A DNA stretch of 64,000 bases from NCBI GenBank assembly GCA_004431415.1, contig QPMI01000197.1, positions 1-64,000 of the forward strand. The letters are read 5' to 3'. The position numbers and the translations under genes are program-made. This document shows, one piece after another, positions 12,161 through 59,200 of this stretch (position 1 is the stretch's first letter; every line of letters begins with the position of its first letter). The notes under the pieces were generated by a model. That model worked only from the letters and a program-made list of their open reading frames with translations. It did not search any database and had not been told where the DNA came from. The stretch is from Cyanophora paradoxa CCMP329 (lineage: Eukaryota > Plantae > Glaucophyta).

Positions 12161-12182
12161 TCAGAGAATGACCCTTGAATAT

Positions 12183-24492: not shown

Positions 24493-24960
24493 CGTCCGGC
24501 TCGAGCTCAACCTCGAGCCTTTCCAAGCTGCTCATGGTTCGAGCCTTTCCAACCTCGTCCTCAACCTCGAGCCTTACCAAGCTGCTCATGGTTCGAGCCT
24601 TTCCAAGCTGTTTTTATAATTTCGTTAAATGTGCTTCTCATTCGCAGAATGATTGCACCAATCCGTCAACTTCTGGAGAGTTCGCCAATGCGTTCAACAA
24701 AGTCCGCAGTTCCAGCCAGTGCCAACAAGCTCAAGGTTCGAGGTGCGGGACACATTCGTCTCTTCTTCGGGACCTGCCTTATCCTTTCCCAGATAAATAT
24801 ATATGCATTATAGCTAGATATACGCAGGAGGTATTCTGTGCGACAGCTTTTTCTAGTCAAACTTATTCAGCTACATGTGTGATGGAATTTAAACATTAAA
24901 TCAAATAGCCACACGCCGCTGGGATGAAAAGAACGAGTGGGCCAGTTGGCAACGTTCGCT

Positions 24961-25151: not shown

Positions 25152-26712
25152 GGATCAGGCGAGCGTGGGGCGACCAGGGGGGCGGGTGGGGGCGAGGGCG
25201 CGCTCTGTAGTCCACCGGCAGCTCGACCGTCCTGGGGTCGACGAGCCACACTGCCGCCCGAGGGTGAGGCGGGGCGGGCGCTTGCAGGGCCCCCAGGGCC
25301 CGCGGCACGCACCGGGGAACTTGGGGATGCGCAGCTGGTGGTGGGCGAACTGCATCTGCGGGGGGGTCAGGAACATCGTCGGCCCGAACGTGAATCGGGG
25401 GGTCGCGTCGCGCCTCGTCGTCGCAGTTGTGGGAGCGGATGTACCCCGGTGACAGGAAGCAGACATACGTCCGGCAGCGCTGCATCGCCTCCTGCGCATG
25501 CCGCGCGCCCCGCGCGCTCGGCATGCTGGAAGGCGCGAGGCGGTGGGCGACGCGCACCCCGATCTTGGCCATCCACTTCTGGCCCGCCTTGAGCTCGCGG
25601 TCGACCCTGCGCGGGGCGAGGGCGTCAGCGGTGCGGGGGCGGGGGAGGGGGCGAGGGAGAGGGGTGGCCTTGGAGGGGGGCGAACCATATCTTGAAGCCG
25701 GCGGCCTCGAGGGCGTCGCAGTAGCGGAAGACGAGCGTCGCGTCGACGTGGGCGTAGCTGCAGGCGGCGTGAGCACCGGCAGCGTGCGGCGGGGGCCGGG
25801 ACAAGCGCCTGACGAAGCAGTCCCAGGCCTTGCCGTCGGCGGCCGGCTGCAGCGGGGGCGGGTGCTGCGGGACTGCAGCAGGCGCCTGCTGGGCGCGCTG
25901 GGCGGCCGGCGGGGAGGGCGCCGCTGGGGGACGGGCTCGCGTCGGGGAAGGGAAGCACGGGCGGGGTACACTGACCGGGGGCCGGAGGGGCCGGGCGGCG
26001 GGCGCAGCGGGGCGCGGGGCGGCGGGCGCAGCGGGGCGCGCGGCAGGGGCGGCGGGCTGCGGTGGCGGGTGAGTGCGCGGTGGAGGCCGAGGGGTAAGGG
26101 GCTGGGAGTGGGGCGCACCGCGGGGGCGGGGAGGGAGCGGAGGTAGGGCACGACGGCGGCGCACTGGGCTGTACCGTCGTACATGTTGTCATTAACGGCG
26201 CGGCGGACAAGCTCGGGCCACGAGTCCACGACGGGGTTGCCGCTCACGTACAGCTCCTGCAGGGCGGCGAGGCGGCCGATCTCCGGCGGCAGCGCCGTGA
26301 GCTGGTTGTCACTCACGAGCAGCTCCTTCAGGGCGGCGAGGCGGCCGATCTCCGGCGGCAGAGCCGTCAGCTGGTTGTCACCCACGTACAGCGTCTGCAG
26401 GTTGGCGAGGCGGCCGATCTCGGGCGGCAGCGCCGTCAGTCGGTTGTCGTTCACGTTCAGCCACCGCAGGGCGGTGAGGCGGCCGATCTCCGGCGGCAGG
26501 TCCGTCAGCCGGTTGTTGGTCAACCACAGCTTTTCCAGGTTCGTCAGCTTGGCGAGCTCGGCCCCCGGGATGCGCGTGAGCTTGTTATAGCCGAGGTCGA
26601 GCTCGCGGATGTTCGCCGGCCCCGCTCGCGCGATCTCCGCCGCCGGCCACTCCGTCCGCCCCTCCTTCTCCAGGTCCAGCTTCCCCTCCGCCGGGATCCA
26701 CCCCTTGCCCAT
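25152..26712 (-). pseudogene. LRR-TIR gene A1 (TIR type A), last exon separated by the transposon insertion
   Basis: ATG at 26712 (MGKGWIPAEGKLDLEKE) is followed by LRRs with 4 LPPEIGRL modules. Spliced TIR exons read AWDCFVSYAHVDATLVFRYCDALEAAGFKIWVDRELKAGQKWMAKIGEAMQRCRTYVCFLSPGYIRSHNCDDEMQFAHHQLRIPKFPVWLVDPRTVELPVDYR. The final exon seen in the paralog (MMLASVNW) is absent. Confidence 0.85.
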
Positions 26713-39861: not shown

Positions 39862-40429
39862 CTCTCTCTAGTACACGAGTGATCCCCGGGGGCGACGTGA
39901 CTCTAGCGCGATTTCTTGCTCTTCTGTACACTATGGTTTCGTCCTTATTCTAGTTAGCGTTGTGTCTTATATATTCCGGCATCCCACTGAGCCTGCCCGG
40001 CGGCCAAACGTTAACCCGAGCCCCGATCGCGAGCCCGAGCTACCCTCGCAGTCGATCTCGCCGAAAAACATCGTACAGACAGACTCATGATCAAAGACAG
40101 ACTCTTAGGCAGCTAGGACAGAACCGCTAGACAAGAATCACAATTTGGAAGGACAAATTACGTCCAGCCGCCTGAACAATTCAACCGAATTCGAAGGGAA
40201 ATCTAAGACTTTGGCGGATGCGGAGCGCCGGGCCTCGCGGAGGAGGGCTGAAGCACCCGCGGCCTCCTCGAGGAGGGAGGAAGGGGGGAGGGAAGGGCCG
40301 GGGAGGGAGGCGGGCCGGAGCCGGGCCCCGCCCGGCGGCGAGGGGAAGCGAGCGGGCGAGGGCCTGGGGCCGACGGCTTAAGCTTGGCTCGCGGGGGGCG
40401 AAGCGGAGCCGGGCGGCCGGGCGGGGCCC

Positions 40430-42004
40430 TCAGCGGCGGGCGCCCTCCTCGCAGGCCTCGAGCAGGAGCCGGAGGCTGACCCGCCGGAAGGCCGCCTCCG
40501 CGCAGCACGGGATCGCCACGCGGGCAAAGACGAGCCGCAGGTCGGACGGGATCTCCCCCGCTGAGGGGCGATCGAATTCGGTTGGCTGGCGGGGTGGTTC
40601 TGGGGCGGGGGCGCACGGGCGGGGAAGCGGCAGGACTTCTCGTCGTGGAGGAGGACGATGTTCTTCCCCGCCCGCGCCGCGTGCCGCACCTCGCCCAGCA
40701 CGTACTGGCTCGCCAGCACGTCTGCGCAGCGCAGGGTCCGAGAAGATCAGACGCCGCCGGGCACGAGAACAGCCGCGCGGACCCTGAGAGATGATGAGGA
40801 CGACGCTCGCGGAGGCGTCGATGATGTTCTCGAGCCTGCGGGGCGGGGGGCCGGCCCGGGTGAGAGCGCGGCGAGCACTCCAACTCGAGAGGCGCGCACT
40901 GGTGGAGCTCGAGGCGGGAGTCGTCGACGTCGAGGAAGACGCGGAGGCCGGGGCGGGCCTGCTCGAGCTGGAGCTTGAGGGCGAGGGCGAGGTGGCCGGC
41001 CGAGGACTGCTTGTGCGAGAGGAAGACGTCGTACTGCGTCGCTGCGGCGGGGGGTGAGGCTTGGGCGGGGCCGGCTGCTCCGGGGTGGTGCACGGACCGG
41101 GGGCCGGGGCGGCGGGGCGCACCGCGGGGGCGGAGGCGGGGAGGGAGCGGAGGGATCCGAGGCGTTCAGGCGTTCAGAGGGGGTTGCCGCTCACGTCCAG
41201 CGTCTGCAGACGGGAGAGGCGGCCGATCTCCGGCGGCAGCGCCGCCAGCTGATTTTTCTCCACGCTCAGCTTCTGCAGGTTGGAGAGGCGGCAGATCTCC
41301 GGCGGCAGCGCCGTCAGCTGGTTGTTGCTCACGTACAGCTCCTGCAGGTTGGAGAGGCGGCCGATCTCGGGCGGCAGCGCCGTCAGCTGGTTGTTGCTCA
41401 CGTACAGCTCCTGCAGGATGGAGAGGCAGCCGATCTCCGGCGGCAGCGCCGTCAGCTTGTTGTCGCTCACGTTCAGCCACCTCAGGTCGGCGAGGCGGCC
41501 GATCTCCGGCGGCAGCGCCATGAGCTGGTTGCCGCTCACGCCCAGCACCTGCAGGGCGGCGAGGCGGCCGATCTCGGGCGGCAGCGCCGTAAGCTGGTTG
41601 CCGCTCACGCCCAGCGTCTGCAGGTTGGAGAGGCGGCCGATCTCGGGCGGCAGCGCCGTCAGCTGGTTGTCGTTCACGTACAGCGTCTGCAGGGCGGCGA
41701 GGCGGCCGATCTCCGACGGAAGCGTCGTCAGCTGGTTGCTCTGCACGTTCAGCCACCTCAAGGCCGCGAGGCGGCCGATCTCCGGCGGCAGGTCCGTCAG
41801 CCGGTTGTTGGTCAACCACAGCCACTCCAGGTTCGTCAGCTTCGCGAGCTCGGCCCCCGGGATGCGCGTGAGCTTGTTCTCGCCAAGCTCGAGCCAGCGG
41901 ATATTCTCGGGCCCCGCCGCCGCGATCTCCGCCGCCGGCCACTCCTCCCGGTCCTTCCCCCCCAGGTCCAGCTTCCCCTCCGCCGGGATCCACTCCTTGC
42001 CCAT
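40430..42004 (-). CDS. LRR-TIR gene B1 (TIR type B, SARM1/TIR_2-like) with an in-frame TGA between LRR and TIR
   Basis: ATG at 42004 (MGKEWIPAEGKLDL) is followed by 9 LP(P/S)EI modules ending GNPL-TGA (41174). TIR exons read YDVFLSHKQSSAGHLALALKLQLEQARPGLRVFLDVDDSRLELH / LENIIDASASVVLIISQ / VLASQYVLGEVRHAARAGKNIVLLHDEKSCRFP / EIPSDLRLVFARVAIPCCAEAAFRR...EEGARR*. Confidence 0.8.
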
Positions 42005-44636
42005 GCCTGCGGGGCGGTCAGCGGCAGAAGCGCGCCGCGGGGAGCGCGCCCCTGCCCCGCCCGGCGGGTCCCCAGCCTGCGGGGGGCCGCCCGACAGCGC
42101 CATAGCACGCTTATAGGCGCCCCGCGCGGCCCAGAGCGAAGCGATTCGAATTCGTTGGTTCTAGACCGGGATCCCCCCAGCGGCAACTAGCAAGCAATCC
42201 AGGCCATGCGCCCGCCCTGAGGAGCGCACCTTCGACGGATCGCCTTCCCGCAGAAGAGCCGAGCTTTCGGAACCGACGGAGCCCGCCCGGTCAGAGATTC
42301 CTTGCCGGTCGCGCGCTGTCTGCTGGCTGCTCGCCCGCTGCTCTGTGCAGGGAGCTGTGAGCGAACGAGAGGCGAGCGATGCAAGAAACCCGTCGGCTTC
42401 GCACCTGCCGCGATAAACAACGCCTACACCGCCGTAACACCGAGGCCCTCTGCGGCGTCGGTACGTACACGCCGTTCTCGGCCGTCCGAGGCCGTCCGAG
42501 GCCCGGAGGCCGAAGCGCCGGGGTACGGGGTCACTAGTAAAAGGGGGGTCGCCGGAGCCTGTTTCCATGCATCTTTCAGCGCTGCGCATGCCTTTTCACG
42601 GACCTGTCAGCGCTGCGCATGCCTTTTCACTTCAGTACTTCCCTTCTGTCAGTCCTTCTGTACTCCAGCAGGGAAGTCCTTCTGTACTCCAGCACTACCA
42701 GCAGGCTGGCAGCAGCACGCAGCCGAATCAGCAGCGAAGCTCTGGTCTCCGGCTTCGGCGATCGGGACGCGGGCGAGACTCGGACCCGGCAGCCGCGGCG
42801 CTAGCGGGGGCTATGGCGGATCGGACTCCGGCCGCGGGAGCACAGCGCGCGGCGGATCGGAGCACAGCGCCGGTCCGACCCGCACCTCGCGTCGGCCGTC
42901 CTAGTGGCGCTAGCTATTGACCTATTGACGCCGGCTTCACGGACGCCATGCCGGAGGAGCGCCGGCCGATTTCCAGCGGTATACGCGTACGTAGCGCTCC
43001 GACGGCCTGCAGCTGCAGCTGCGCGGGCTGCCGCAGTGCGCGCGGCGCGGGACGGCGGGGCGCCTCCGCCGCAGCGCCGATCGCGAGGGCGCCCGGCCGG
43101 GGCCCCTAGGGAGAGTGGCGGTCGCTAGGGAAGCGTAGCGCGCGCGAGGCGGACTCCGGGGCAGGGCGGAGTGGCGGCCATCTAACTTAGGACGCCGAGG
43201 CGCGAAGCGCGAGCACCCCGGGCACGCCGCCGGACCCGGCCCCTCCCCCTCTCCCTCCGAGACTCCGCGCCCGGAGGAGAGAGGGCGCGCGCCCGCCCCG
43301 TACCCCTCCCGCCGACCCCTCTTCTTCTCGGGACCAGGGCCCGCCTCGCCGCCCCCCCCCCCCCCCCCCCCGGGCCTCGAGGTGGCCCCCTCCACACCGT
43401 ACCCCTTCGTCCCCAATCCCCGCTTATCCCCCGCGGCCTCGCCCCCCCACCCCCCCCACACACACACACACACCCCCACCCCCCACCCCCGCCTCGCCCC
43501 CACGCCCTCGCCTCGCAGATCGCAGGCTTGTGGCACCGGCCCCCGTGCCTCCCGCAGGCCTCGCTGCCCGCTCTCCCCCCGCCGCCCCGGGCCGCCCCGG
43601 GCCGCTGTCTCGGGGCCGTCTGAGCCGTCCCGCCCCGGCTCTCCCCCGGCCGCCCCTCCCTCCCCCCCCTGCCTTTTCCTGTCCCTCGCGCTGGCCCCGC
43701 CCCGGCACGCCTCTCGATCTACGCCCATCCTCTCTTCGCTCCCTTCCGCCCAGCCCTCTTCGCTTTCAGCCCCCCTCGAGGCTCGCCCGTTTAGCTCCCG
43801 GCCTCCCCAGCTGCAGTCCCACGCAGCCTTTCGGGCTCTTCCCCCCGGCGGCCCCCCAAGCTGCCTCGTCTCCGAGTCGGCGCCTCGACTGAATGTAGCG
43901 GATCCGGATCCTCCCACGGAACCTCCCGGGCCCTCTAGATCTCCCCCCCCCCCCCCCCCCTCCACGCCGCCTCCGGATCCTGCACGGGCCCGGAGCCTCG
44001 GAGGCGACGCGACTCCCTTGCTCTTTATTCTGTATACCGTACGTATACTATGTTCTTGTACATGTCCTTATTCCGAGGTTCTAGTTGTGTTTTAAGCCTA
44101 TGTATTCTGATCGCGCCTTGTAATTACTCTAGTTGTATTCTAGATCTGACTCCGGATCCGTGACAGCGCATGCCGCAGTGCAGCCTCGAGATCCGAGAGG
44201 TGAACCTGCGAAGCTCTCTGCCGCAGTGCCACAGCTCCACTGCGGCACTGCAATTGCTCTGCGCCGGTCCCGGGGACGCTCATGACTCAGCCTGCAGCTG
44301 GGGGGTGTGTGATCCGATCCACTGGCCATGGGCCATGATCATCGGATGCTCAGCCTGCCAGGCTGGCAGCTGCAGCCTGTCAGCGGTCAGCTGCAGATCA
44401 CGATCGCTGCCAGGCCGATCATGAGTCATGAACACGATCCGATGCCATGATGATCAGCTGCAGCTGCAGCTCCGAGGCTCGGGATCCTCAGCGATTATTC
44501 TAGATATCGTTGACTGTTTCATGATCATGATCATGATTAGCTGTATGCCCGGATAGCCCAGGTCGGCCCTTGAGCTTGGAGGCTTCCCTTCCTTCCTTTC
44601 CTTCCTTCCAATAACACTTCGCGGACACTGTCCTGC

Positions 44637-46054
44637 CTACTTCCGCTTGGCGCCGGCGGGGGGCGTCTTGCGGGCCACCTCCGAGCGGCTCGCCGGCCGC
44701 GTGGGGGCCGCCTCCTTCGGCGGCTCGGGCTCCGCTGGCTTGGCCGCCTCCGCCAGGGGCGCCGGCGGCGGCGGCGTCTCCGCGCCGGCTGCGACCGGAC
44801 CGGAGGCGCGCGCGGTTAATTTAACATCTCGGTACTTGTAAATATTCGTGCATGCAAGCGTGCTTCCCCGCCTCCCGTTATCCATGCTAGATCAAAGCGA
44901 GTCGTAATGGAGAATGAGATCAACTGCCCAATTGTGTCCCAACATATACAGCTCTACTCAGCCTCGGCATCGACATTGGCTTCAATTGCGAGCTTCGTCG
45001 TGAGCTCGAGCTCCCGCCGCCAGGAGTGCCTTCCGCAGGGCCTCCAGCCCCCTTTGGCAAAGGTAGCGGCGGTAAAAACCCGCCTGCGCCAGCAGAGCTA
45101 GACGCTCGTCGGCACCGACGCCCACCCTTCGCACCTCCACGCGTCAGTTTCAGGCCACTCGGAGTTACAATTGCAACCGCAGCGCTCACCAGCCTTCGAA
45201 GCAGGCCACATTCGCCGCGTCCTCGTCGTAGTCGGTCAGGTTGCTGAGCTGAGGTTCGGAAGTCGAAGGCGGCACCGATCGCTCCCAGCATGTTTTCTCC
45301 TTGGCGAACACCTCGAGGAGGCCAGCCCAGCTGACGGTCAATACAGCATGCGGCCCTGCGCCCTCGAGCTCGGGGGGGGGGGGGGGGGGGGGGGATGGGG
45401 GCGCAGGCGTGAGCTAAGCGCGGCGCAGGCGGACCTTGGGCGGGGCGGGGGCGGCTCGAAGGCGCCGATGTACTCGTCGCCGTTGGCGTACAGCATGCGG
45501 CCCTGCGCCTTCGAGCTCAGGCGAGGAAGAGGCGGGGGGAAGAGGGGGACTGAGTTCCAAGAGGGGGGAGGGGAGGAGGCGGGGGCTGCGAGCCCCCCCC
45601 CTTGAAGTACGATTGGTATAGATCTTAGTACGGGCTTAGTCGTTTTCTTCAATAGTAGATCTTAGCCTGATCTTAGTAGATTCTCTGATTCTTGGGCTTA
45701 GGCTTCTTAATAGGCTTGAGCTCAGGCCGCACCCGGCCGCACTTGAAGTCGCCGGCCCATTCCCCCTCGTACACGTCCCCGTTCCTGTCCGTCGGGGCGC
45801 GTCAGATGAGGCGGAAGCGGGGGGGGGGGGGAGGCGGGGGGGGGGGGGGTAACGGACATGTAGCGCATGGTGCCGGTGCCGTGCCGCTTGTTGTCGAGCC
45901 AGTCCCCTGCGCGGGGATATGGGGGGGGGGGAGAAAGGGGGGTACGCGGCCCGCCCGCCCGCACCCTCGTAGGTCTCCCAGACGGTCTCCTCCTCTGCCG
46001 CCGGTTCGGCTGGGGCGGGCGGGCTGCTGCTGCCCCTCCGCCCCTCCGCCCCCT

Positions 46055-46088
<34 letters not shown>

Positions 46089-48441
46089 TGCCGCCGGCGC
46101 CGCCGGCGCCGGCGCGGCCTCCGAGGGGGCGGTACCCGGCCGCGAGACGGGCGGGGAGGGCGCCGGCGAGGGCGAGGGGCCGGAAGGGACAAAAGGCTGC
46201 CCAGATGAAGCCGCCGGGACCGCCAGGGCCGCTGCTGGGGCCTGGGCCGGGGGGGCGCGCGGGGGCTTCCTGGGGTACCGCGCCGCGCCGCGGCCGGTGC
46301 GGACGCCGGACTTCTTGAAGTCTGAGCGGCGGCCCCCGCGATCAGCGTCCACACGAATAATCTCAAGCTATCAAACTAATGGACCCTTAAACCGCCCAGG
46401 ACTCCAGATTCTTAAGAAGACTAGGACCCTACCCCTCTCCCCCATAAAGCGATCGGCTCCCCCTGTGGCCAGGCCGCGCCCCGCTTTAAGCTCCAGCTCC
46501 GGCCAGGCCGCGCCGCGCCGTGCCGTGCCGCGCCGCGAGCGCTGCCCCGCTTAAAGCCATTAGACTCTTAAGCCGCCCAGGAATTAAACTATTAGATTCT
46601 TAATCTGCCCAATAGTTCCCGGCAATCAGCACGGCGAGCCACGAGCGATCCACTCCCGCTCTAAGGGACGCAAGCCCCGCCCCCCGCACGCATACGAGCG
46701 ATCCGCTCCCGCTGTGGCCAGGCCGCGCCCCGCTTAAAGCCCCCGTGCGCAATCCGCCCGCCCCCGCTTGAAGGGCCGCAACCCTCCCTCGGCCCCCGCC
46801 CGCCGCGCCGCGCACCGCCGTCGTAGAGGATGCCGTTGCGGTACTCGGCATGGCCCCCCGGGCCCTGCGCCCCGCCCCGCCCCGTGAGGCTCAGGTTGGA
46901 TTGGATTGGATAAGATCAGATTGGAGTGGATTGGATCAGATTGGATCCGGCAGGTTGGCGGGCGGGGCGCACGCTGGATTACATTACATTAGATTAGATT
47001 AGAGCGGGTTTCTCGTAGCAATATCTAAACGGCGGGGGCAGGGCGGGGGGGGGGGGGGGGGGGGGGGGGCGAGGCGCACACCGCGTTCACATTAAATTCG
47101 TTTACGCCGCGTTAGAGGCACTATGAAACGTTGGATCTAAATCAACAGTCCCGCAGCCCGGCGGGAGGCGGGAATTTTAGAGTGGTCCCGGCGGTAGGCG
47201 GGGCTACAGTGGTCAGGGGAGGCGGGAAAGCTCATAGGACGAGGCGGGGGCGGGCGGAAATCCGGAGTCCTCGCTAGATTAGATTAGGTTAGATTAAATT
47301 AGAGCGGGCGCCTCATAGCGAAGGGCAGCTTAGAAAGGGCGGGCGGGGCCGGGAATCCGGGGCGGGGCGGGGCGGGGCGCACGTCGCGGTCGCCCATGAC
47401 GAAGGGGCCGACGTACAGGACCTCCCCGTCCGGGCCCAGAGCAGGCCCGAACCTGCGCGAGAGTGGAGAGGATCGGATCGTATTGGATGGGATGGGATCG
47501 GATCAGCCCTGAGTAGCTAGCTTCGGGCTTCGAGTCTAGTCGGCTTCGAGTGGGCCGCGAGGCGGCTTGTACTTAGAAGCCCTAAATCCTTCCTTTCATT
47601 AGAAGCTCAGAAACCTAAGAAGCTAGGAGGGGAGGCGGCCAAGCCGGAAGAAAGCAGCGCGGACCGGAGGGTGCCGTGGCCGTGGCGGGCGATCGAGTGG
47701 CCGTGGGCGCCCGTGAAGGGCCCCTCGTACACGTCCCCGCTCGGGTGCTCCTCCACCCCTGCGAACGAAGCTCAGGGGAGGGTGGGGCTAGGGGAGGGGG
47801 ATGGGGGTAGGGGGGGTACCGAAGGGAAGGCCGTCCTCGAGCCACTCGCCCGAGAAGCGGCTGCCCGTCTCGGCGACGGTGAGCGCGCCCTGCTCAGATC
47901 AGATCAGATCAGATCAGATCAGATCGGATCAGATCAGATCAAATCAGATCGGATCTGATCTGGTTCTGCTCACCTGACCCTGACGGACGCCCTGGTTCCA
48001 CTCGCCCTCGTATTTGTCCCCGTTCGTGTACAGCATAACGCCCCGCCCTGTGCTATTTTCAGAAAGTGGGGGGGGGAAGAGTCGAGGGGTACGGGCTCGC
48101 ACCGTGCCGCACGTTGCGGCGCCAGTCGCCCGTGTACACACGGCCGTCCCAGTACGTCATCGTACCCCCCGCCCCGTCCATCGAGCCCTCCCTCCACGGG
48201 CCCTGCACCCCGGGTCGTTTCGGGCGGGGGGGGGGGGGGGAGAAGAGGACGAAGGGGGGTACGGGAACCTGGTAGACGTCGCCGTTGGAGAACTTCATGA
48301 GGCCCGAAGGACCGGTCATCTGACCGTCCACCCACGGCCCCTCGTACACCTGTACCCCCGGGGAAACAAGTCATAAGCCTCTCAAAGGAGTGGGGGGAAG
48401 GAGTTAAGGAGGGGTACGCACGTCTCCGCCCTGGAAGCGGC
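44637..48441 (-). pseudogene. 5'-truncated duplicate of the MORN-repeat gene
   Basis: The exons YEGPWVDGQMTGPSGLMKFSNGDVYQ, GTMTYWDGRVYTGDWRRNVRHG and GRMLYANGDEYIG and the end RKTPPAGAKRK* match 56275-59303. Homology stops abruptly after gccctggaagcggc (48441 vs about 59303). Confidence 0.85.
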
Positions 48442-48681: not shown

Positions 48682-50336
48682 CTAGCGCCGCAGAAAGTCG
48701 CGCAGGCCGGCGACGAGCTCGCCGGCCGCCGCGTCCGCCGCCGCCGCCCCCTCCCCGCGCTGCATCGTCCAGTTCACCGACGCCAGCATCATCTGCCGCC
48801 GTCCGCGGATCAGGCGAGCGTGGGGCGACCAGGGGGGCGGGTGGGGGCGAGGGCGCGCTCTGTAGTCCACCGGCAGCTCGACCGTCCTGGGGTCGACGAG
48901 CCACACTGCCGCCCGAGGGTGAGGCGGGGCGGGCGCTTGCAGGGCCCCCAGGGCCCGCGGCACGCACCGGGGAACTTGGGGATGCGCAGCTGGTGGTGGG
49001 CGAACTGCATCTGCGGGAGGGTCAGGAACATCGTCGGCCCGAACGTGAATCGGGGGCCGCGTCGCGCCTCGTCGTCGCAGTTGTGGGAGCGGATGTACCC
49101 CGGCGAGAGGAAGCAGACGTACGCCCGGCAACGCTGCATCGCCTCCTGCGCCCGCCGCGCACCCCGCGCGCTCGGCATGCTGGAAAGCGCGCGGCGGTGG
49201 GCGACGCGCACCCCGATCTTGGCCATCCACTTCTGGCCCGCCTTGAGCTCGCGGTCGACCCTGCGCGAGGCGAGGGCGTCAGCGGTGCGGGGGCGGGGGA
49301 GGGGGCCACGGAGAGGGGTGGCAATGGAGGGGGGCGAACCTTATTTGGAAGCCGGCGGCCTCGAGGGCGTCGCAGTAGCGGAAGACGAGCGCCGCGTCGA
49401 CGTGCGCGTAGCTGCACGGCGGCGTTAGAGCCGGCGGCGTGCGGTGGAGGCCGGGCAACGCGCCTGACGAAGCAGTCGCAGGCTTTGCCGTCGGCCGCCG
49501 GCTGCAGCGGGGGCGGGTGCTGCGGGACGGCAGCAGGCGCCTGCTGGGGACGCTGGGCCGCGGGCGGGGAGGGCGCCGCTGCGGGGCGGGCTCGCGTCGG
49601 GGGAAGGGAAGCACGGGCGGGGGTACACTGACCGGGGGCCGGAGGGGCGCGTGCGGCGGGGGCGGCGGGCTGCGGTGGCGGGTGAGTGCGCGGTGGAAGC
49701 CGAGGCCGGGGCCGGGGTGAGTGCGCGGTGGCGAGGGGCGGGGCCGGGTGCCGGGGCGGCGGGGCGCACCGCGGGGGCGGGGGCGGGGAGGGAGCGGAGG
49801 TATGCGAGGCGTTCAGCCGTGTTCTTCTTCTTGAGGAGCTCCGGCATGGCCGTGAGGGGGTTGCCGTCCACGTACAGCACCTTCAGGGCGGCGAGGCGCC
49901 CGATCTCCGGCGGCAGCGCCGTCAGCTTGTTGCCGCGCACGTCCAGCGCCTGCAGGATGGAGAGGCGGCCGATCTCGGGCGGCAGCGCCGTCAGCTGGTT
50001 GTTCTCCACCCAAAGCCCCTGCAGGGCGGCGAGGCGGCCGATCTCCGGCGGCAGCGCCGTCAGCTGGTTGCCATCCACGTTCAGCACCTTCAGGGCGGCG
50101 AGGCGGTCGATCTCCGGCGGCAGCGCCGTCAGCTGGTTGCTCTGCAACCACAGCTTCTCCAGGTTCGTCAGCTTCGCGAGCTCGGCCCCCGGGATGCGCG
50201 TGAGCTTGTTATAGCCGAGGTCGAGCTCGCGGATGTTCGCCGGCCCCGCCGCCGCGATCTCCGCCGCCGGCCACTCCGTCCGCCCCTCCTTCTCCAGGTC
50301 CAGCTTCCCCTCCGCGGGGATCCACCCCCTGCCCAT
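48682..50336 (-). CDS. LRR-TIR gene A2 (TIR type A), apparently complete
   Basis: MGRGWIPAEGKLDLEKE is followed by 4 LPPEI modules, the cap GNPLTAMPELLKKKNTAERLAYLRSLP and a Pro/Ala linker. The spliced TIR runs DCFVSYAHVDA...SHNCDDEMQFA...MMLASVNWTMQRGE...LRDFLRR*. Phases of the linker exons were not fully verified. Confidence 0.85.
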
Positions 50337-53300
50337 GCCTGCGGGGCGGTCAGCCGCAGAAGCGCGCTGCGGGGAGCGCGCCGCTGCCCCGTCCGGCGGG
50401 TCCCCAGCCTGCGGGGGGCCGCCCGGCCCGCGCTGAGCCCCTCCCGCAGGGGGCGGTGCACGCGCGCGCCGGGCTCTGCCTTTACCGGCCGCCCCGCCCC
50501 GCCCGAGTCGCGGCTCGGGGGAGCGATCGGCGGCCTATGGGAGATTGCACCCCCACGCCCGGGCGCGCGCTGGGTCCTCCCCCCCCCCCGTTCGTGGGTT
50601 GGCGAACGAGGCAGCAAGCGACGCCGGCGCCGGAGCTCGAGCGTGGGCCCCGTCGACTCGCCCCGCATCTTAGCCGACGTCCGCGCGCCCGCCGCGTCGC
50701 TTGGTGGGATCAGTGCGGCCCCTCGCACGCTGCTAGGCGACCCGTGCGGCCCAGAGCGAATTCGAAGCGATTCGTACGCGTAGATTCTAGACCGGCGGGG
50801 TCCGCGCAGCGGCAACTAGCGAGCAATCGGGGTTCTGCACCCGCCCGGAGGAGCGCACCTTCGACGGATCGCCTTGACGCAGCAGAGCCGAGCTTTCGGA
50901 ACCGACGGAGCCCGCCCGGTCAGAAATCCTCGCCGGTCGCGTGCTGCCTGCTGGCTGGCAGTGGCTGCTCGCCCGCTGCTCTGTGCAGGGGCCTGCGCGC
51001 CGGTACAAGCAAGCAATGAGCAAACGACAGGAGCGATGCCAGAAACCCGTCGGCTTCGCGCCTGCCGCGATGAATGCCGATTCACCGAACGCTGGGGTAC
51101 GGTCACGCCGAAGCGCCGGGGTACGGTCGCGCCGCCTCGGCTGCTTTCATGGCGGCCGGTGGAGCGGTACGTATACGCTGCCTTTGCTTCTACGGTACGG
51201 TCGCGCCGCGGGCCTCTTGCTTTCATGGCGGGCGGGCGGGTCTGTGAGCTGCATATACCTATAAACGGCGTTCCGGACCGGTGCACTACGTATACTGCCC
51301 GTCCACTTCATCGTGCGCCAGCCTTCCAGAGCGATCATGATCGGGACACAGGCGCAGCTGCAGCTGCAGCCATCAAGACGCAGCTGCGCAGACGCACCGG
51401 CCGCGGCAGCTGCCGCCTGGCAGCCGGGCCCGAGGCCATGGCGGAGCACAGCGCCGTCCGCGGTGCACGTGGCGGGTCGACCCGGCCCGGCCCGCTCCTC
51501 GTTCAGCAGTACTTTCTGTAATCCAGCAGCACTCAGACGAATCATGAGCGAAGTTCTGGTCGCCGCGGCGCCGGCTCCGGCGAACGGGGCGCGGGAGAGG
51601 CTCGAACCAGCTCGATGCTCGCCGGCACCGCGGCGCCGCGCGGCCTGCTGATGCACATGGGCGCACGCGTGCACGCAGGCGCCGTCCAACGACGCTTTAC
51701 CCGTTGACGCAGTGCATGCCTGCAGTCGCGGCTCCCGCGGCCAGCGCCCCGGCGCCCCGCGCGAGCTGCAGCGCGCCTCTCGGGGCCCCGCGGCGGATCT
51801 GCGGGCGCCCGGTCCCGCCCCGCCGGACCGCGGACTGGAGACCTCTCCGCGCGCCCCTCGCCCGTCGCCGCGGCGCGGCCCTCGCCCCGCCCCCGCCCCC
51901 GCCGCCCGCGCAGCGCAGCGCCCCGCCGCCCGCCAGTCCCCGCCGGGCGCCCTCCCCGAAGGGCCGCGTTCGCCCCCGGCCCGCCCCGCCCCGCCCCGCC
52001 GCGCGCCTCGAATCCCCTTCCCGCCCTCCCTCGGACGCCTCGCGCGCCCCCGTACCCCACCCCGCAGGCCCTTCGAGCCGGGCGCCGGCGCCCCTTCGCA
52101 CGGGCCGGCCCTTCGGATCCCCCGCCTTCCTCCCGGGGATCGAGGCGAGCCCCGCCCTCCCCGCGCTTCTTCTGAGGCTTCATCTCGGCTTCATCTCAGG
52201 CTCACCTGAACATGAGATCAGGCCCGGCCCGAGGACGCCGTCCAGTCGGCGGCGCCCGCCGCCCGCCGCCCGCCGCCCGCCCCCGGCCCGCCTTCCCTCC
52301 CTCCGAGGCTCCTCGATCCGAGGAGAGTGGGCGCCCGCCCCGTACCCCCCGACCCCTCTCCTTCGCGGCCCCAAGCCTGCCTCGCCCCCTTCTCCCGGGC
52401 CTCGAGGTGGGCCCCCTCCTCCCTCCCCTCCCCTCCCCTCCCCCCCCCCCCTCCCCCGTCTTTAACCCCCGCCTTACCCCCGCGGTCTCGCCCACTTGCC
52501 CTCGCCCCCGCAGATCGCAGGCGTGTGGCGCGGGATATCCCTACCCCCCCCTTCCCCCCCGGGGCCGCCCGCCCTCCCCCCGTCCAGCTCCCTCCCTCCC
52601 TCCCTCCGCGGCGGACCGCCTGCCGCCCGCACGGGCGCCCCTCCTGCGCCATCGGGCCGCCCGGCCTCGCCCCCCGCTCGCCCCCCCTCCGCCCCCGGGC
52701 CCCTGGCTCGGGGCCGTCTGAGCCGTCTGAGCCGTCTGGGCCGTCTTCATCCGCCCCCGTTTCTCCTCTCCCTCGCGCTGTCCCCGCCCCGCCCCGCCCC
52801 GCCCCGCCTCTCGCATAGGCCGCCCCTCTCTTCGCCCCCTCCTCCGAGGATCCCTCGCAACCGGCCCCCCCTTCGGCCCTCCGCCCCGGCCCGGCCCCGG
52901 CCCCGGCCCGGCCTCCGGCCTCGCGGGCCGCGCCGAGGCCTCTAGATCTGGCGGTGGATCGAGGGCGGGCGCCGGCTCCCTCCCCTCCGCGCCCTCGCTT
53001 CCGAGTCCTTCCTCCACGCCGCCTCCCCGCCGGCGCCTCCCGGCCCCGCCCGTCCCCGCCCCCCGGACTCCGGACTCCGGGAGGACCCCGGCCCGGGAAC
53101 CTGCAGTTCATTGTTGCAGTTGGACCCGGGACTCGTACCTGATTACTAAGTCACTAGCCTAGTAGCCATGGTCATGATCACGAGCGCTTGTCCCTTTCAG
53201 TGATCATGACTGTCCGGATCCATATGCACGTGATCGTGACGTCAACATGTACAGGCCTCGGGCCTTGAAGCACAAACCGTCGAACTATGCACCGCGGCAC

Positions 53301-53955: not shown

Positions 53956-55475
53956 TCAGGGGCGGGCGCCCTCGTCGCGGGACCCGCCGGAAGGCCGCCT
54001 CCGCGGGCGGGCAAAGACGAGCCGCAGGTCGGACGGGATCTCCGCGGCTGTGGGGCGATCAAATTTCGAGGTTCGGTTGGCTGGTAGAGCGACCTAGGCC
54101 TGGGGCGGGGGCGCACGGGCGGGAAAGCACGTAGTGGCTCGCCAGGACGTCTGCGCAGCACGGGGCCGGGGAAGATCAGGCGCCGCCAGGCACTAGAACA
54201 GCCGAGCGGACCCTGGGAGATGATGAGGACGACGCTCGTGGAGGCGTCGATGATCTTCTCGAGCCTGCGGGGCGGGGGGCCGGCTCGGGTGAGAGCGCGG
54301 CGAGCACTCCAGCTCAGAGGGGCGCACTGGTGGAGCTCGAGGCGGGAGTCGCCGGCGTCGAGGAAGACGCGGAGGCCGGGGCGGGCCTGCTCGAGCTGGA
54401 GCTTGAGGGCGAGGGCGAAGTGCCCCGCCGAGGACTGCTTGTGCGAGAGGAAGACGTCGTACTGGGCCGCTACGGCGGGGCGTGAGGCGGAGGGGCGGAG
54501 GGGCCGGCTGCTCCGGAGATGATGCACGGACCGGGGGCGGGCTGCGGCGAGGGGTGAGGAGCGGGGCGCGGGGGACGGGGCGGCGGGGCGCACCGCGGGG
54601 GCGGGGGCGGGGAGGGAGCGGAGGTATGCGAGGCGTTCAGGCGTTCAGAGGGGATTGCCGCTCACGTCCAGCGTCTGCAGACGGGAGAGTCGGCCGATCT
54701 CCGGCGGCAGCGCCGCCAGCTGATTTTTCTCCACGCTCAGCTTCTGCAGGTTGAAGAGGCGGCAGATCTCCGGCGGCAGCGCCGTCAGCTGGTTGTTGCT
54801 CACGAGCAGCTCCTGCAGGCTGGAGAGGCGGCCGATCTCCGGCGGCAGCAACGTCAGCTGGTTGTTGCTCACGTACAGCTCCTGCAGGGCGGCGAGGCGG
54901 CCGATCTCCGGCGGCAGCGCCGTCAGCTGGTTGCTCTGCACGTTCAGCCACCGCAGGGCGGCGAGGCGGCCGATCTCCGGCGGCAGCGCCGTGAGCTGGT
55001 TGCTACCCACGCCCAGCGTCTCCAGGGCGGCGAGGCGGCCGATCTCCGGCGGCAGCGCCGTGAGCTGGTTGCCGCTCACGCCCAGCGTCTGCAGGTTGGA
55101 GAGGCGGCCGATCTCGGGCGGCAGCGCCGTCAGCTGGTTGTCGTTCACGTACAGCGTCTGCAGGGCGGCGAGGCGGCCGATCTCCGACGGAAGCGTCGTC
55201 AGCTGGTTGCTCTGCACGTTCAGCCACCTCAGGGCGGCGAGGCGGCCGATCTCCGGCGGCAGGTCCGTCAGCTGGTTGTTGGTCAACCACAGCCACTCCA
55301 GGTTCGTCAGCTTGGCGAGCTCGGCCCCCGGGATGCTCGTGAGCTTGTTCTCGCCAAGCTCGAGCCAGCGGATGTTCTCCGGCCCCGCCGCCGCGATCTC
55401 CGCCGCCGGCCACTCCGTCCGGTCCTTCCCCCCCAGGTCCAGCTTCCCCTCCGCGGGGATCCACTACTTGCCCAT
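53956..55475 (-). pseudogene. LRR-TIR gene B2, pseudogene
   Basis: Starts ATG GGC AAG TAG (stop at codon 4, 55464-55466; GAG in B1). It has 9 LRR modules and the same TGA after GNPL. The TIR lacks 71 bp including the GEV helix and has further small deletions. Confidence 0.85.
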
Positions 55476-56274: not shown

Positions 56275-59200
56275 CTACTTCCGCTTGGCGCCTGCGGGGG
56301 GCGTCTTGCGGGTCACCTCCGAGCGGCTCGCCGGCCGCGCCGGCCCCGCGGCCTCCTTCGGCGGCTCGGGCTCCGCAGGCTTGGCCGCCTCCGCCGGGGG
56401 CGCCGGGGGCGGCGGCGTCTCCGGCTGCGCCCGGACCGGAGGGGACGCGCGCGGTGAGCCGCAAATAAACCTAGCTGGATACAAGGGCCTCTAGCGCAGG
56501 CGCAAGCGGACCTTGGGCGGGGGCGGGGCGGCTCGAAGGTGCCGATGTACTCGTCGCCGTTGGCGTACAGCATGCGGCCCTGCGCCCTCGAGCTCAGGGG
56601 GGGGGGGAAGAGAGGGGGGAGGGGGGGGGGGGGCGTGGACCCGGGGGACCGAGTTCTAAGGGGAGGAGGGAGGAGGCGGGGGAGGGGAAGGCGCCGGGCG
56701 TCTAGAAGAGGCGCCGAGCGGCGCGGGGCGAGGGGGGCGGCGCCCCCACTTGAAGTTGGATTGATATAGATCTTAGTAGGGGCTTAGTCGTTTTTCTTTA
56801 ATATTGAATCTTAGCTAGATCTTAGTAGATCTAGATTCTCTGATTCTTGGGCTTATGGTTCTTAATAGGCTTAAGATTAGGCCGCACCCGCCCGCACTTG
56901 AAGTCGCCGGCCCACTCGCCCTCGTACACGTCCCCGCTCCTTTGGAGGAGGCGCCTCAGATGAGGGCGGGGGAGAGGAGGGGGTGGGGGGTACGGACATG
57001 TAGCGCATGGTGCCGGTGCCGTGCCGCTTGTTGTCGAGCCAGTCCCCTGCGCGAGGATGAGGGGGAGGGGGGGGGAAGAAAGGGGGGGTACGCGGCCCGC
57101 ACCCTCGTAGGTCTCCCAGACCGTCTCCTCCTCTGCCGCCGGTTCGGCGGGTGCGGGCGGAGCAGCAGGAACCCCCTCCGCCCCCTCCGCTGCCGCCGCT
57201 GCCGCCGGCGCCGGCGGCTGAGCGGCCTCCGAGGGGGCGGTACCCGGCCGCGAGGCGGGCGGGGAGGGCGCCGGCGAGGGCGAGGGGCCGGAGGGGGCGG
57301 AGGGCTGAGGCTGAGGCTGAGCGGGCGCCGAAGATACCGCTGAGGCCGGGGCCGGGGCCGGGGCCGGGGCCGGGGCGGCGCGCGGGGGCTTCCTCGGGTA
57401 CCGCGCCGCGCCGCGGCCGGTGCGGACGCCGGACTTGAAATCTGAGCGACGGCCCCCGCGATCAGCGTCCATGCGACTCTTGAACTATTAATCTATTAGA
57501 AGCTTATGCCGCCAGGAGATTCTTAAGAAGACGCTCGAGAGCGCGACAGGCGAGGCCCCCCACCCCCCACTCCCCCATAAAGGCCGAACGCCCTCGCGCT
57601 CCCGCCGCGCGCCGCGCCGCGCCGCGCCGCGCCGCGCCGCGCACCGCCGTCGTAGACGACGCCGTTGCGGTACTCCGCGTGGCCCCCGGGGCCCTGCGCC
57701 CCGCCCCGCCCCGTGAGACAGGCTCGGGTCGGCCACGCTGGGCGGATGGGCGGGCGGGGCGGTGCCTCGAGTTCGTTTAATCTAGCGGGGGCGGGGCTTG
57801 GGGGGCGGGGGGGGGGAGGGGGAGGGTGGGGGGGGGGGGTGCGGGGCGGGGCTGGGGGGGGGAGCCCGGGGGGGGGGGGGGGGGGCGAAACATAGCTATG
57901 GTACTATCGTAGTCATAGTTCTACAATAATCATCAAGGTAAAAAGCGGAGCCGGTGCGGGGGCGGGCAGGGCTTCACTATAAATCGGTTAAGCTTTAGGT
58001 CCGTTGAGCTTTTAGAGTTTAATCTAGCGGGAGCGGGGCGGGGCGGGGGCGGGGGCGCACGTCGCGGTCGCCCATGACAAAGGGGCCGACGTAGAGGACC
58101 TCCCCGTCCGGGCCCCCCGCAGGCCCGAACCTGCGCGAGAGAGGGGATGAGACCGGATCGGATCGGATCAGCCCTGGCTAGCTAGCTCCTGGCGTCGGCT
58201 TCGGGTCCAGTGGGCCGTGGGATCCGAAGGGCCGACCCGGAGGCGGGGAAGGCGGCTTAGAGGCCCCAAGCATGTAAGCCCCGAGTGCTTCTAACCAAGC
58301 CGTCTCAGAGTACCCCGACGAACAGCTGCCACGAGAGGAGATCACGGACTGGAGATCGTATGAGCCCTCGCAGGCCCTAAGCCCCCGCTATCTATGAGCC
58401 CCGGACCTATACGAGCCTCCAGCGCTTATAACCGAGCCCCAAGAACGCAGCGCGGTGGCCCAACGCCCCTCTATCTATCTATCTGCCATCCCTAAGCCCC
58501 AGGCCCCTTGCTTTTTATTCAAGCCCCAAGAAAGCGGCGCGGACCGGAGGGTGCCGTGCCCGTGCCGGGCGATGGAGTGGCCGTGGGCGCCCGTGAAGGG
58601 CCCCTCGTACACGTCCCCGCTCGGGTGCTCCTCCACCCCTGCGAACAAAGTTCAGGGGGGGGGGGGGGGGGGGGGGTGGGGGGGGGGGGAGGGGTACCGA
58701 AGGGGAGGCCGTCCTCGAGCCACTCGCCCGAGAAGCGGCTGCCCGTCTCCGCGACGGTGAGCGCGCCCTGCTCGGATCAGATCAGATCGGATCGGATCGG
58801 ATCTGATCAAATCAGATTAGATCGGAGCAGAGGGCTCACCTGACCCTGCCGGACGCCCTGGTTCCAGTCCCCCTCGTACTTGTCCCCGTTCGTGTACAGC
58901 ATAACGCCCCGCCCTGCGCTATTTTAAGGGGGGGGGGAAGAGACGAGGGGTACGGGCTCGGGCTCGCACCGTGCCGCACGTTGCGGCGCCAGTCGCCCGT
59001 GTACACGCGGCCGTCCCAGTACGTCATCGTACCCCCCGCCCCGTCCATCGCGCCCTCCCTCCACGGGCCCTGCACCCCAGGACGGTTCAGGGTGGGGGGG
59101 GGGGTGAAGACGAAGGGGGGGTACGGGTACCTGGTAGACGTCGCCGTTGGAGAACTTCATGAGACCCGAGGGACCGGTCATCTGACCGTCCACCCACGGC

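What the first reader, a model, noticed from the sequence alone, without database searches (positions are those of the whole stretch)
49800..50336. LRR modules (69-bp units) are hypervariable and appear shuffled among paralogs while flanks stay near-identical
Seen: A1 and A2 are nearly identical in the 5' flank, N-cap and TIR, yet all of their 23-aa modules differ in the xxLxVxxN strand. A1 has RWLNVND, QTLYVGD, KELLVSD, QELYVSG; A2 has KVLNVDG, QGLWVEN, QALDVRG, KVLYVDG. The scaffold LTALPPEIGRL is almost invariant. A1 module types reappear in the B genes (LRWLNV, LQTLYV, LQELYVS, ELLVS), and SILQ is shared by A2 and B1. B1 and B2 agree in modules 1-3 and the last two but diverge in the middle, and LRWLNVQSN occurs twice in B2. 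The array is intronless in an otherwise intron-dense locus. Established: these positions form the concave ligand-binding face, which lamprey VLRs diversify by cassette copying. Inference: the conserved ctgccgccggagatcggccgcctc scaffold acts as a recombination or gene-conversion handle that generates a specificity repertoire.
Basis: partly seen in the sequence, partly recalled or inferred. Interest (0 to 1): 0.85.

Follow-up and report, generated by a model that had tools for sequence, protein, structure and literature searches.

The report
Fast-diversifying LRR arrays in algal receptor cluster
Four neighbouring leucine-rich-repeat/TIR genes of the alga Cyanophora paradoxa keep almost identical flanks while the binding-face codons of their repeats have changed very fast, through exchange between gene copies and probably selection. 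Plant disease-resistance gene clusters evolve the same way, and nothing here points to lamprey-style programmed assembly.

Summary
The window is Cyanophora paradoxa contig tig00000841. It holds four minus-strand paralogs, A1, B1, A2 and B2, with 4, 9, 4 and 9 in-register 69-bp LRR units.

A1 and A2 differ by 4% in the 5' flank, 3.6% in the N-cap and 6.7% in the TIR introns. At binding-face codons pN is 0.43, and units at the same position are as different as random unit pairs.

Exchange between paralogs is shown. A2's C-cap is B-type (site patterns 28:1, p=5e-21). 15 of the 17 B1/B2 amino-acid changes fall in four contiguous units. Unit number varies in register.

Diversifying selection is likely: pN/pS is 2.0 at face codons and 0.18 in the scaffold, and the same concentration of changes appears in three independent gene pairs.

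'Shuffling' is not supported. Across 143 family units, faces shared between genes sit at the same array index, which means collinear descent. A2's faces are unique.

A VLR-like programmed system is not supported. All four copies keep the full gene layout, and no orphan cassettes occur in 64 kb. The read-level test for clonal variation could not be run.

B2 is probably a pseudogene.

Verdict: germline diversification of the plant R-gene-cluster type, in a glaucophyte LRR-effector family that this scan had already flagged on other DNA.

The parts
49779..50336 (-). A2 exon 1, without introns: N-cap 50336-50145, four 69-bp LRR units 50144-49859, C-cap 49858 to about 49779
   Evidence: ORF and translation; Pfam LRR_8/LRR_4 at E about 1e-22; AF2 model with pLDDT 94
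49745..49816 (-). B-type tract inside A2, covering the C-cap end and the first bases of intron 1. A2 matches B1/B2 here and not A1. Boundaries are approximate.
   Evidence: Site patterns A2=B!=A1 28, against A1=A2!=B 1; alignments
48859..49585 (-). A2 Pro/Ala linker exon and TIR-A exons, separated by short introns of 52-79 nt
   Evidence: Peptide mapping against EukProt P0154; weak Pfam TIR_2 hit on one exon ORF
50337..51540 (-). A2 5' flank, homologous to the A1 5' flank (about 4% mismatch)
26127..26712 (-). A1 exon 1: N-cap 26712-26521, four units 26520-26235, and the family-typical GNPVVDSWPE C-cap
25204..25930 (-). A1 linker and TIR-A exons
41174..42004 (-). B1 LRR ORF: N-cap, nine units 41812-41183, then GNPL followed directly by TGA at 41176-41174. 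Same gene as EukProt Cyanophora paradoxa tig00000841_g4726.
40433..41039 (-). B1 TIR-B exons
   Evidence: P0148 carries PF13676
54645..55475 (-). B2 LRR region: nine units 55283-54654, TAG at codon 4 (55466-55464), TGA after GNPL (54647-54645). Probably a pseudogene.
53972..54464 (-). B2 TIR-B remnant, lacking the GEVRHAARAGKNIVLLHDE exon segment

Best explanation
What it is. This is a tandem cluster of a Cyanophora-specific receptor-like gene family. Each gene has a conserved N-cap, then 2-11 LRR units of 23 aa, a C-cap, a Pro/Ala linker and an effector. In this window the effector is TIR-A or TIR-B.

How the arrays diversify. They change in the germline by the processes known from plant resistance-gene clusters:
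(1) Whole-gene and segmental duplication.
(2) Unequal exchange in the 69-bp register, which changes unit number.
(3) Ectopic gene conversion or recombination between paralogs, which pastes in patches such as the B-type C-cap in A2 and the diverged block of units 4-7 in B1/B2.
(4) Probably positive selection for new residues at the beta-strand positions of each unit.
Meanwhile the convex scaffold LTALPPEIGRL is held nearly constant, down to position-specific codons.

Shown here: the hypervariability, the incongruence between flanks and array, the A/B chimera, the in-register unit indel, and the collinearity of shared modules.

Inferred: selection as a cause, the share of conversion versus point mutation in the A2 array, and any immune-type sensing function.
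For: Identity and family. B1 equals EukProt EP00741 Cyanophora paradoxa tig00000841_g4726. All but two weak matches to the N-cap are C. paradoxa proteins. Together with the two short members they make about 20 genes, fused to TIR-A, TIR-B, SAM-TIR or RING, plus one gene model with WD40 repeats in front of the LRR array.

A1/A2 rates. dN is 0.021 in the N-cap, 0.023 in the linker and TIR exons and 0.020 at scaffold codons, but 0.64 at face codons (pN 0.43). Introns differ by 6.7% and the 5' flank by 4.1%.

Incongruence. A1=A2!=B sites against tip changes are 96:12 in the flanks and 8:38 in the array (p=8e-18). In the C-cap, A2=B!=A1 is 28 against 1 (p=5e-21).

B1/B2. 15 of 17 amino-acid changes lie in units 4-7, while units 2 and 3 are identical.

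Selection. On a minimum spanning tree of the 26 units, pN/pS is 2.0 at face codons (binomial p=0.012) and 0.18 in the scaffold (Fisher p=1.6e-9).

A1 versus its closest relative P0154. All 7 array-region substitutions and one 23-aa indel fall in the array. There are none in the N-cap, C-cap, linker or TIR exons t1-t3.

Scaffold codons are position-specific. V21 is GTG in 26/26 units although GTC leads 19:4 elsewhere. L13 is CTC in 26/26, while L16 and L19 are CTG.

Family entropy is 2.3-3.4 bits at unit positions 2, 3, 5, 7 and 8, and at most 0.7 bits across PPEIG.

The strands of the AF2 model cover unit positions 3-7.
Against: Synonymous sites are a poor clock here. N-cap dS is about the same for A1/A2 (0.09) and for A versus B (0.06-0.16), and scaffold pS is about 0.10 for any unit pair. 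So pN/pS of 2 is only moderate evidence for selection.

The minimum-spanning-tree method is crude.

No donor was found for A2's four faces. For that array, conversion and point mutation therefore cannot be separated.

PHI on the units is not significant.

No expression, ligand or immune role is shown. B2 is probably dead, and both B genes have a stop codon directly after the array.
Confidence: 0.7

Rival explanations
1. Exchange and relaxed constraint only, with no diversifying selection. The x positions of LxxLxVxxN are simply unconstrained. The arrays are old lineages moved between genes by conversion, while the flanks are young or homogenised.
For: The C-cap chimera shows block replacement. 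A1/A2 units at the same position are as different as random pairs. dS is uninformative. The divergent A1/A2 block includes non-coding intron 1 sequence with indels.
Against: pN/pS is 2.0 at face codons. A2 unit 3 differs from B unit 3 by 4 single-nucleotide changes, all non-synonymous and all at face codons, with a 39-nt scaffold part that is identical. In the very close pair A1/P0154, 7 of the 9 substitutions hit variable array positions. A2's faces have no copy among 143 units.
Confidence: 0.2
2. A programmed or high-frequency cassette-conversion system, like lamprey VLR or antigenic variation. Scaffold homology would guide copying of 30-nt face cassettes into expressed genes, from arrays that include pseudogenes such as B2, and so create clonal receptor diversity.
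For: Within arrays there are near-identical face cassettes at non-adjacent units: A2.1/A2.4 differ by 2 nt of 30 and B2.1/B2.5 by 1 nt, while their scaffold parts differ by 3 nt. B2 keeps an intact nine-unit reading frame although it has a stop at codon 4.
Against: All four copies have their own 5' region, N-cap and C-cap, and there are no orphan cassettes in 64 kb. Shared faces are collinear between genes. The cassette-versus-scaffold contrast is not significant (4/90 against 9/117 nt). PHI is not significant. The B repeat of RWLNV is also explained by an old multi-unit block duplication present in both B1 and B2. No deaminase or other machinery was sought or seen.
Confidence: 0.04
3. Point mutation plus strong positive selection alone. 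The A1 and A2 arrays are strict positional homologs since duplication, and no exchange was involved in the array.
For: A2's faces are unique in the family. Scaffold silent divergence in the array (0.12) equals that of the flanks (0.09-0.14).
Against: It would need about 8 times the neutral rate at 34 codons. The neighbouring C-cap was certainly replaced. Each A array shares more sites with B than with the other A array (20 and 18 against 8). Scaffold pS is the same for any unit pair, so it dates nothing.
Confidence: 0.06

Closest known systems
Plant resistance-gene clusters (NLR and LRR-RLP loci; reviews and cases PMC3645687, PMC3113787, PMC6771003)
   Same: Tandem paralog cluster. Chimeric genes formed by gene conversion or unequal crossing-over. 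Variable LRR number. Substitutions concentrated at the solvent-exposed xxLxLxx residues, with dN above dS there. Pseudogenes lie among the live copies.
   Different: There is no NB-ARC domain. The LRR is N-terminal and the TIR C-terminal. The units are 23-aa cytosolic 'typical' units with an almost invariant scaffold. The host is a unicellular glaucophyte. No pathogen link is known.
Lamprey/hagfish variable lymphocyte receptors
   Same: LRR modules with a conserved framework and variable concave-face residues. Short framework homology can guide copying.
   Different: VLR has one incomplete germline gene, hundreds of flanking partial cassettes, somatic assembly and CDA deaminases. Here all four copies keep the full gene layout, no orphan cassettes occur in the window, and the variation seen is between germline paralogs.
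Leptospira LIC11098/LIC10831/LIC12759 and bacterial LRR-Roc-COR ('internalin A'-annotated) proteins; SHOC2
   Same: The same 23-aa LRR subtype. The scaffold NQLTxLPxEIGxL is almost identical. The best solved-structure matches have E of 1e-85 to 1e-59, and many bacterial hits reach 50-60% identity.
   Different: They have other N-caps and effectors. The Cyanophora N-cap is lineage-specific. The matches say nothing about paralog-level diversification.

Membership tests
Leucine-rich repeat proteins (typical 23-aa subtype) | Tandem LxxLxLxxNxL units that match LRR profiles | tested here: met
   Pfam LRR_8, LRR_4 and LRR_14 at E of 1e-20 to 1e-48; PDB LRR matches at E=1e-85
Leucine-rich repeat proteins (typical 23-aa subtype) | Solenoid fold in which the variable x residues lie on the parallel beta-sheet | tested here: met
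   AF2 model with pLDDT 94. Strands 61-65, 84-88 and 107-111 cover unit positions 3-7; short helices lie on PEIxR. That the strands form the concave face is textbook LRR geometry and was not measured here.
TIR-domain proteins | C-terminal region matches TIR profiles | tested here: inconclusive
   A single A2 exon ORF gives TIR_2 at E=0.0023, below the cut-off. The full-length relatives P0154, P0179 and P0148 carry PF01582/PF13676 in precomputed annotation.
VLR-type somatic LRR assembly | Incomplete germline gene that lacks its LRR modules | tested here: not met
   A1, A2, B1 and B2 each carry a full N-cap, array and C-cap in one uninterrupted exon
VLR-type somatic LRR assembly | Banks of partial donor cassettes flanking the gene | tested here: not met
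   All 26 scaffold matches and all credible LRR peptides lie inside the four LRR exons of the 64-kb window. The rest of the genome was not scanned.
VLR-type somatic LRR assembly | Variation in module content within an organism or clone | not testable with these tools
R-gene-cluster-type evolution (birth-and-death with exchange and diversifying selection) | Tandem paralogs with a chimeric history (segments with conflicting phylogeny) | tested here: met
   Flank, array and C-cap site patterns conflict (p of 1e-17 to 1e-21). Segmental duplicates lie in the cluster.
R-gene-cluster-type evolution (birth-and-death with exchange and diversifying selection) | Non-synonymous excess confined to the exposed xxLxLxx codons | tested here: met
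   pN/pS is 2.0 at face codons and 0.18 in the scaffold. A1/A2 face dN is 0.64, against 0.02 elsewhere. Caveat: dS is unreliable in this genome.
R-gene-cluster-type evolution (birth-and-death with exchange and diversifying selection) | NB-ARC/NLR architecture | tested here: not met
   No NB-ARC appears in the Pfam hits for the window ORFs or the family members. So this works like an R-gene cluster but is not an NLR.

The most novel reading that the evidence does not exclude
The arrays would be substrates of an active, homology-guided cassette-conversion process in dividing Cyanophora cells. Intact arrays in dead genes such as B2 would serve as donors, so a clonal culture would hold a repertoire of receptor specificities. 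This would be a unicellular analogue of VLR assembly or of antigenic-variation systems.
Probability: 0.04. Interest if true: 0.9.

Novelty: new member of a known kind. Interest (0 to 1): 0.42.

Why it matters
Evolution by duplication, exchange and binding-face diversification is the hallmark of receptors in an arms race. It is well documented for plant NLR/RLP clusters. Finding it in an LRR-TIR (non-NLR) family of a glaucophyte, one of the three primary-plastid lineages and a unicellular one, suggests two things. Variable LRR sensors coupled to TIR effectors may be older than NLRs in Archaeplastida. And Cyanophora probably faces specific biotic pressure from viruses, bacteria or parasites. I found no paper describing this family. 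It offers a small, tractable set of genes for testing what an algal LRR-TIR senses. The scan had already flagged the family on other DNA of this genome. What this report adds is the quantified diversification pattern and the A/B chimera.

Tried and rejected
There is therefore no read-level test of clonal variation, expression or B1 splicing.

PHI. A PHI-type permutation test on the 26 units gave p=0.45-0.94. It shows no distance-dependent incompatibility within 69 nt. It is uninformative rather than negative, because homoplasy is uniformly high.

Scaffold silent-site divergence as a clock. Rejected: pS is about 0.10 for any unit pair, and N-cap dS does not scale with non-coding divergence.

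Cassette versus scaffold distance in the within-array duplicates (4/90 against 9/117 nt). The contrast is not significant, so short-tract cassette copying is not demonstrated.

Search for a donor of A2's faces among 143 family units. None is closer than 2 of 6 face residues. The EukProt set is incomplete; it lacks A1, A2 and B2 themselves. DNA of loci outside the window was not available.

DGR-like or deaminase-like mutagenesis. I looked only at the invariant scaffold adenines (AAC, CAG, ACG, GAG, ATC), which do not fit adenine-directed mutagenesis. The spectrum of changes at face codons was not tallied.

tblastn with whole proteins missed the short TIR exons, so I used peptide mapping instead.

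Exon DNA of A1 and A2 was concatenated only inside a local script for the dN/dS count.

Full report
**1. What is there**

The window is GC-rich (about 70%) eukaryotic DNA. A 22-kb block at 2-24 kb has only 47% GC.

The ORF at 41174-42103(-) is the Cyanophora paradoxa EukProt protein EP00741 tig00000841_g4726.t1.

All matches are on the minus strand and at exact 69-bp spacing. They form four arrays:
- A1, 4 units, 26235-26516
- B1, 9 units, 41182-41822
- A2, 4 units, 49859-50140
- B2, 9 units, 54663-55280

Each array lies in one uninterrupted exon. That exon starts with a conserved N-cap (MGKGWIPAEGKLDL...AELAKLTNLEKLWL) and ends with a C-cap. Pfam calls LRR_8/LRR_4 strongly.

Downstream lie a Pro/Ala linker and a TIR region split into short exons by introns of roughly 51-79 nt. 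A1 and A2 share one TIR type. B1 and B2 share another, which is also found in tig00000042 genes. The finding's coordinates are exon 1 of A2.

**2.

Across the 26 units, the scaffold codons for L-P-P-E-I-G-R-L are almost invariant. Codons 2, 5, 14, 15, 17, 18, 20, 22 and 23 of the N-register unit are highly variable.

A1 and A2 differ as follows:

| Region | Mismatch |
|---|---|
| 5' upstream | 16/390 (4.1%) |
| N-cap | 7/192 (3.6%) |
| TIR introns | 21/315 (6.7%) |
| Array | 48/286 (16.8%) |
| C-cap and linker start | 56/129 (43%), with indels |

Units at the same position in A1 and A2 differ by 12, 13, 12 and 7 of 69 nt. That is the range seen for random unit pairs. B1/B2 units differ by 3, 0, 0, 8, 8, 5, 6, 1 and 1 nt, against a background of 2-4 per 69 nt in their flanks.

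**3. Rates**

Nei-Gojobori counts for A1/A2:

| Region | dS | dN |
|---|---|---|
| N-cap | 0.09 | 0.021 |
| Linker + TIR exons | 0.138 | 0.023 |
| Array scaffold codons | 0.121 | 0.020 |
| Array face codons | 0.24 | 0.64 (pN 0.43) |

Binding-face codons have therefore changed about 30 times faster than other non-synonymous sites, and 6-10 times faster than introns or the 5' flank.

One caveat applies. Synonymous sites are a poor clock in this genome. N-cap dS is no larger for A versus B (0.06-0.16) than for A1/A2, and scaffold pS is about 0.10 for any pair of units in any genes.

A measure that does not assume positional homology is a minimum spanning tree over the 26 units. It gives pN/pS of 2.0 at face codons (92 non-synonymous against 12 synonymous changes; binomial p=0.012 against neutrality) and 0.18 at scaffold codons (Fisher p=1.6e-9).

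**4. Exchange between paralogs is demonstrated**

Site patterns for A1, A2 and B, taken where B1=B2:

| Segment | A1=A2!=B | A1=B!=A2 | A2=B!=A1 |
|---|---|---|---|
| 5' flank + N-cap | 96 | 5 | 7 |
| Array units 1-4 | 8 | 20 | 18 |
| C-cap / linker start | 1 | 2 | 28 |

In the flanks the A genes group together. In the array the pattern is star-like, and d(A1,A2)=0.168 exceeds d(A,B)=0.126-0.140 (Fisher against the flanks, p=8e-18). In the C-cap, A2 groups with B (p=5e-21).

A2's C-cap is GNPLTAMPELLKKKNTAERLAYLRSLPAPA. At the DNA level it is the B type. B1 and B2 carry the same sequence with a deletion of about 38 bp, partly offset by an 8-bp duplication, that creates a TGA directly after GNPL. 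A1 has the family-typical GNPVVDSWPE cap. So A2 is an A/B chimera, with a B-type tract at about 49816-49745. The tract is bounded by short sequences that all four genes share.

In B1/B2, 15 of 17 amino-acid changes fall in the four contiguous units 4-7, while units 2 and 3 are identical. My own binomial estimate for such clustering is about 1e-3 after correcting for six possible blocks. This fits a block event or a locally selected centre.

Unit number changes in register. A1 differs from its nearest relative, tig00000532_g1888 (P0154), by exactly one 23-aa unit. Family members hold 2-11 units.

**5. Selection is likely but not proven**

Three independent pairs show changes concentrated at variable array positions:
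- A1 versus P0154 has 7 substitutions and the unit indel, all in the array. There are none in the 64-aa N-cap, the 45-aa C-cap, the linker or TIR exons t1-t3.
- B1/B2 is described above.
- So is A1/A2.

A2 unit 3 differs from B unit 3 by four single-nucleotide changes. All four are non-synonymous and at face codons, and the 39-nt scaffold part is identical.

The scaffold is conserved at the DNA level in a position-specific way that codon bias cannot explain. V21 is GTG in 26/26 units although GTC leads 19:4 in the non-repeat coding parts. L13 is CTC in 26/26, while L16 and L19 are CTG in 25/26. The units therefore share recent DNA ancestry or are homogenised. Yet their face codons stay saturated with differences. 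That combination is what concerted evolution plus selection for diversity predicts.

**6. 'Shuffling' is not supported**

I cut 23 family proteins into 143 units and found 125 distinct six-residue faces.

Among face-identical pairs between different genes, 5 of 7 sit at the same array index. The other 2 are both terminal units. With up to one mismatch allowed, 16 of 34 pairs share an index, against a background of 17%.

RWLNV at index 2 and QTLYV at index 3 recur in A1, P0154, B1 and B2, and QTLYV at index 3 also in P0245. A1's resemblance to the B genes is therefore collinear descent with unit gains and losses, not reshuffled cassettes.

A2's four faces are unique in the family: each has at least 2 of 6 mismatches to every other unit.

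The second RWLNV in the B genes is present in both B1 and B2 and fits an old multi-unit block duplication; TRF also reports periods of 138 and 207.

Near-identical cassettes occur at non-adjacent units within arrays. A2.1/A2.4 differ by 2 of 30 nt and B2.1/B2.5 by 1 of 30 nt. This hints at intra-array copying. The contrast with their scaffold parts (3 of 39 nt each) is not significant, and PHI on the units is not significant.

**7. Programmed, VLR-like diversification**

All four copies have their own 5' region, N-cap and C-cap. No orphan cassettes exist outside the four LRR exons in 64 kb.

The decisive test is module variation in reads of a clonal culture. I keep this reading at about 4%.

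**8. Structure and relatives**

An AF2 model of A2 exon 1, built with a 14-sequence family alignment, has pLDDT 94. Its strands cover unit positions 3-7 and short helices lie on PEIxR. This agrees with textbook LRR geometry, where the x residues of LxxLxLxx line the concave sheet.

The unit subtype is that of Leptospira LIC11098/10831/12759, SHOC2 and many bacterial LRR-Roc-COR proteins. The scaffold itself is therefore an old, widespread consensus and not a device of this locus.

The N-cap is matched almost only by C. paradoxa proteins; the two exceptions are weak metagenome hits. It is fused to TIR-A, TIR-B, SAM-TIR or RING domains. One gene model (P0232) has WD40 repeats in front of the LRR array.

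**9. State of the genes**

B2 has a TAG at codon 4 (55466-55464), the shared TGA after GNPL, and lacks part of a TIR exon. It is probably a pseudogene whose nine-unit frame is still open.

B1 also has the TGA after GNPL (41176-41174). The EukProt model avoids it with an intron from inside the last unit to the TIR. Whether that splice is real is unknown.

**10. Literature**

Full-text searches found no description of a Cyanophora LRR-TIR family. One survey of NLR domain origins included a glaucophyte but reports nothing of this kind.

Gene conversion, unequal crossing-over and diversifying selection on solvent-exposed LRR residues are standard for plant R-gene clusters (e.g. PMC3645687, PMC3113787, PMC6771003).

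**11. Verdict**

This is germline diversification of the R-gene-cluster type in a glaucophyte LRR-effector family. It is a new member of a known kind. The scan had already noted the family on other pieces of this genome.

Noticed in passing
window 55464-55466 and 53972-54464 (-): B2 has a TAG at codon 4 (MGK*W) and lacks the GEVRHAARAGKNIVLLHDE part of its TIR. It is probably a pseudogene, yet its 621-nt array is still an open frame.
   Followed up: partly
window 41174-41176 and 54645-54647 (-): Both B genes have a TGA directly after GNPL. Relative to A2's C-cap they carry a deletion of about 38 bp plus an 8-bp TGAACGCC duplication. The EukProt model of B1 skips the stop with an intron that starts inside the last LRR unit. 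Whether that is real splicing or a prediction fix is unknown.
   Followed up: partly
window 2000-24000: A 22-kb block of 43-50% GC (mean about 47%) sits in DNA that is otherwise about 70% GC. It holds a 166-bp tandem array (10214-12161) and a 360-bp array (23541-24501). It looks like a large inserted mobile element; another scan note reads part of it as a transposon.
   Followed up: no
window 35288-35995: A perfect (100% identical) tandem duplication of 353 bp. It could be very recent or an assembly artefact.
   Followed up: no
window 28780-31209 vs 37643-39865; 45578-46351 vs 56727-57471; 47640-48441 vs 58520-59303: Further segmental duplicates of 81-94% identity interleave with the LRR genes. 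The order B1-Y-Z is repeated as B2-Y'-Z', and A2 sits between the two copies. The Z copies carry MORN-repeat-like ORFs.
   Followed up: no
P0121 (tig00000042_g15428) and neighbours g15426, g15427, g15431: Another contig holds a second cluster of the family. One predicted 1115-aa protein strings together three N-cap+LRR+C-cap modules before a single TIR-B. It may be a fused gene model or a true multi-sensor protein.
   Followed up: no
(protein hits): The 23-aa unit, with its NQLTALPPEIGxL scaffold, is nearly identical to that of many bacterial LRR-Roc-COR proteins (50-60% identity). A bacterial origin of the repeat module is conceivable.
   Followed up: no
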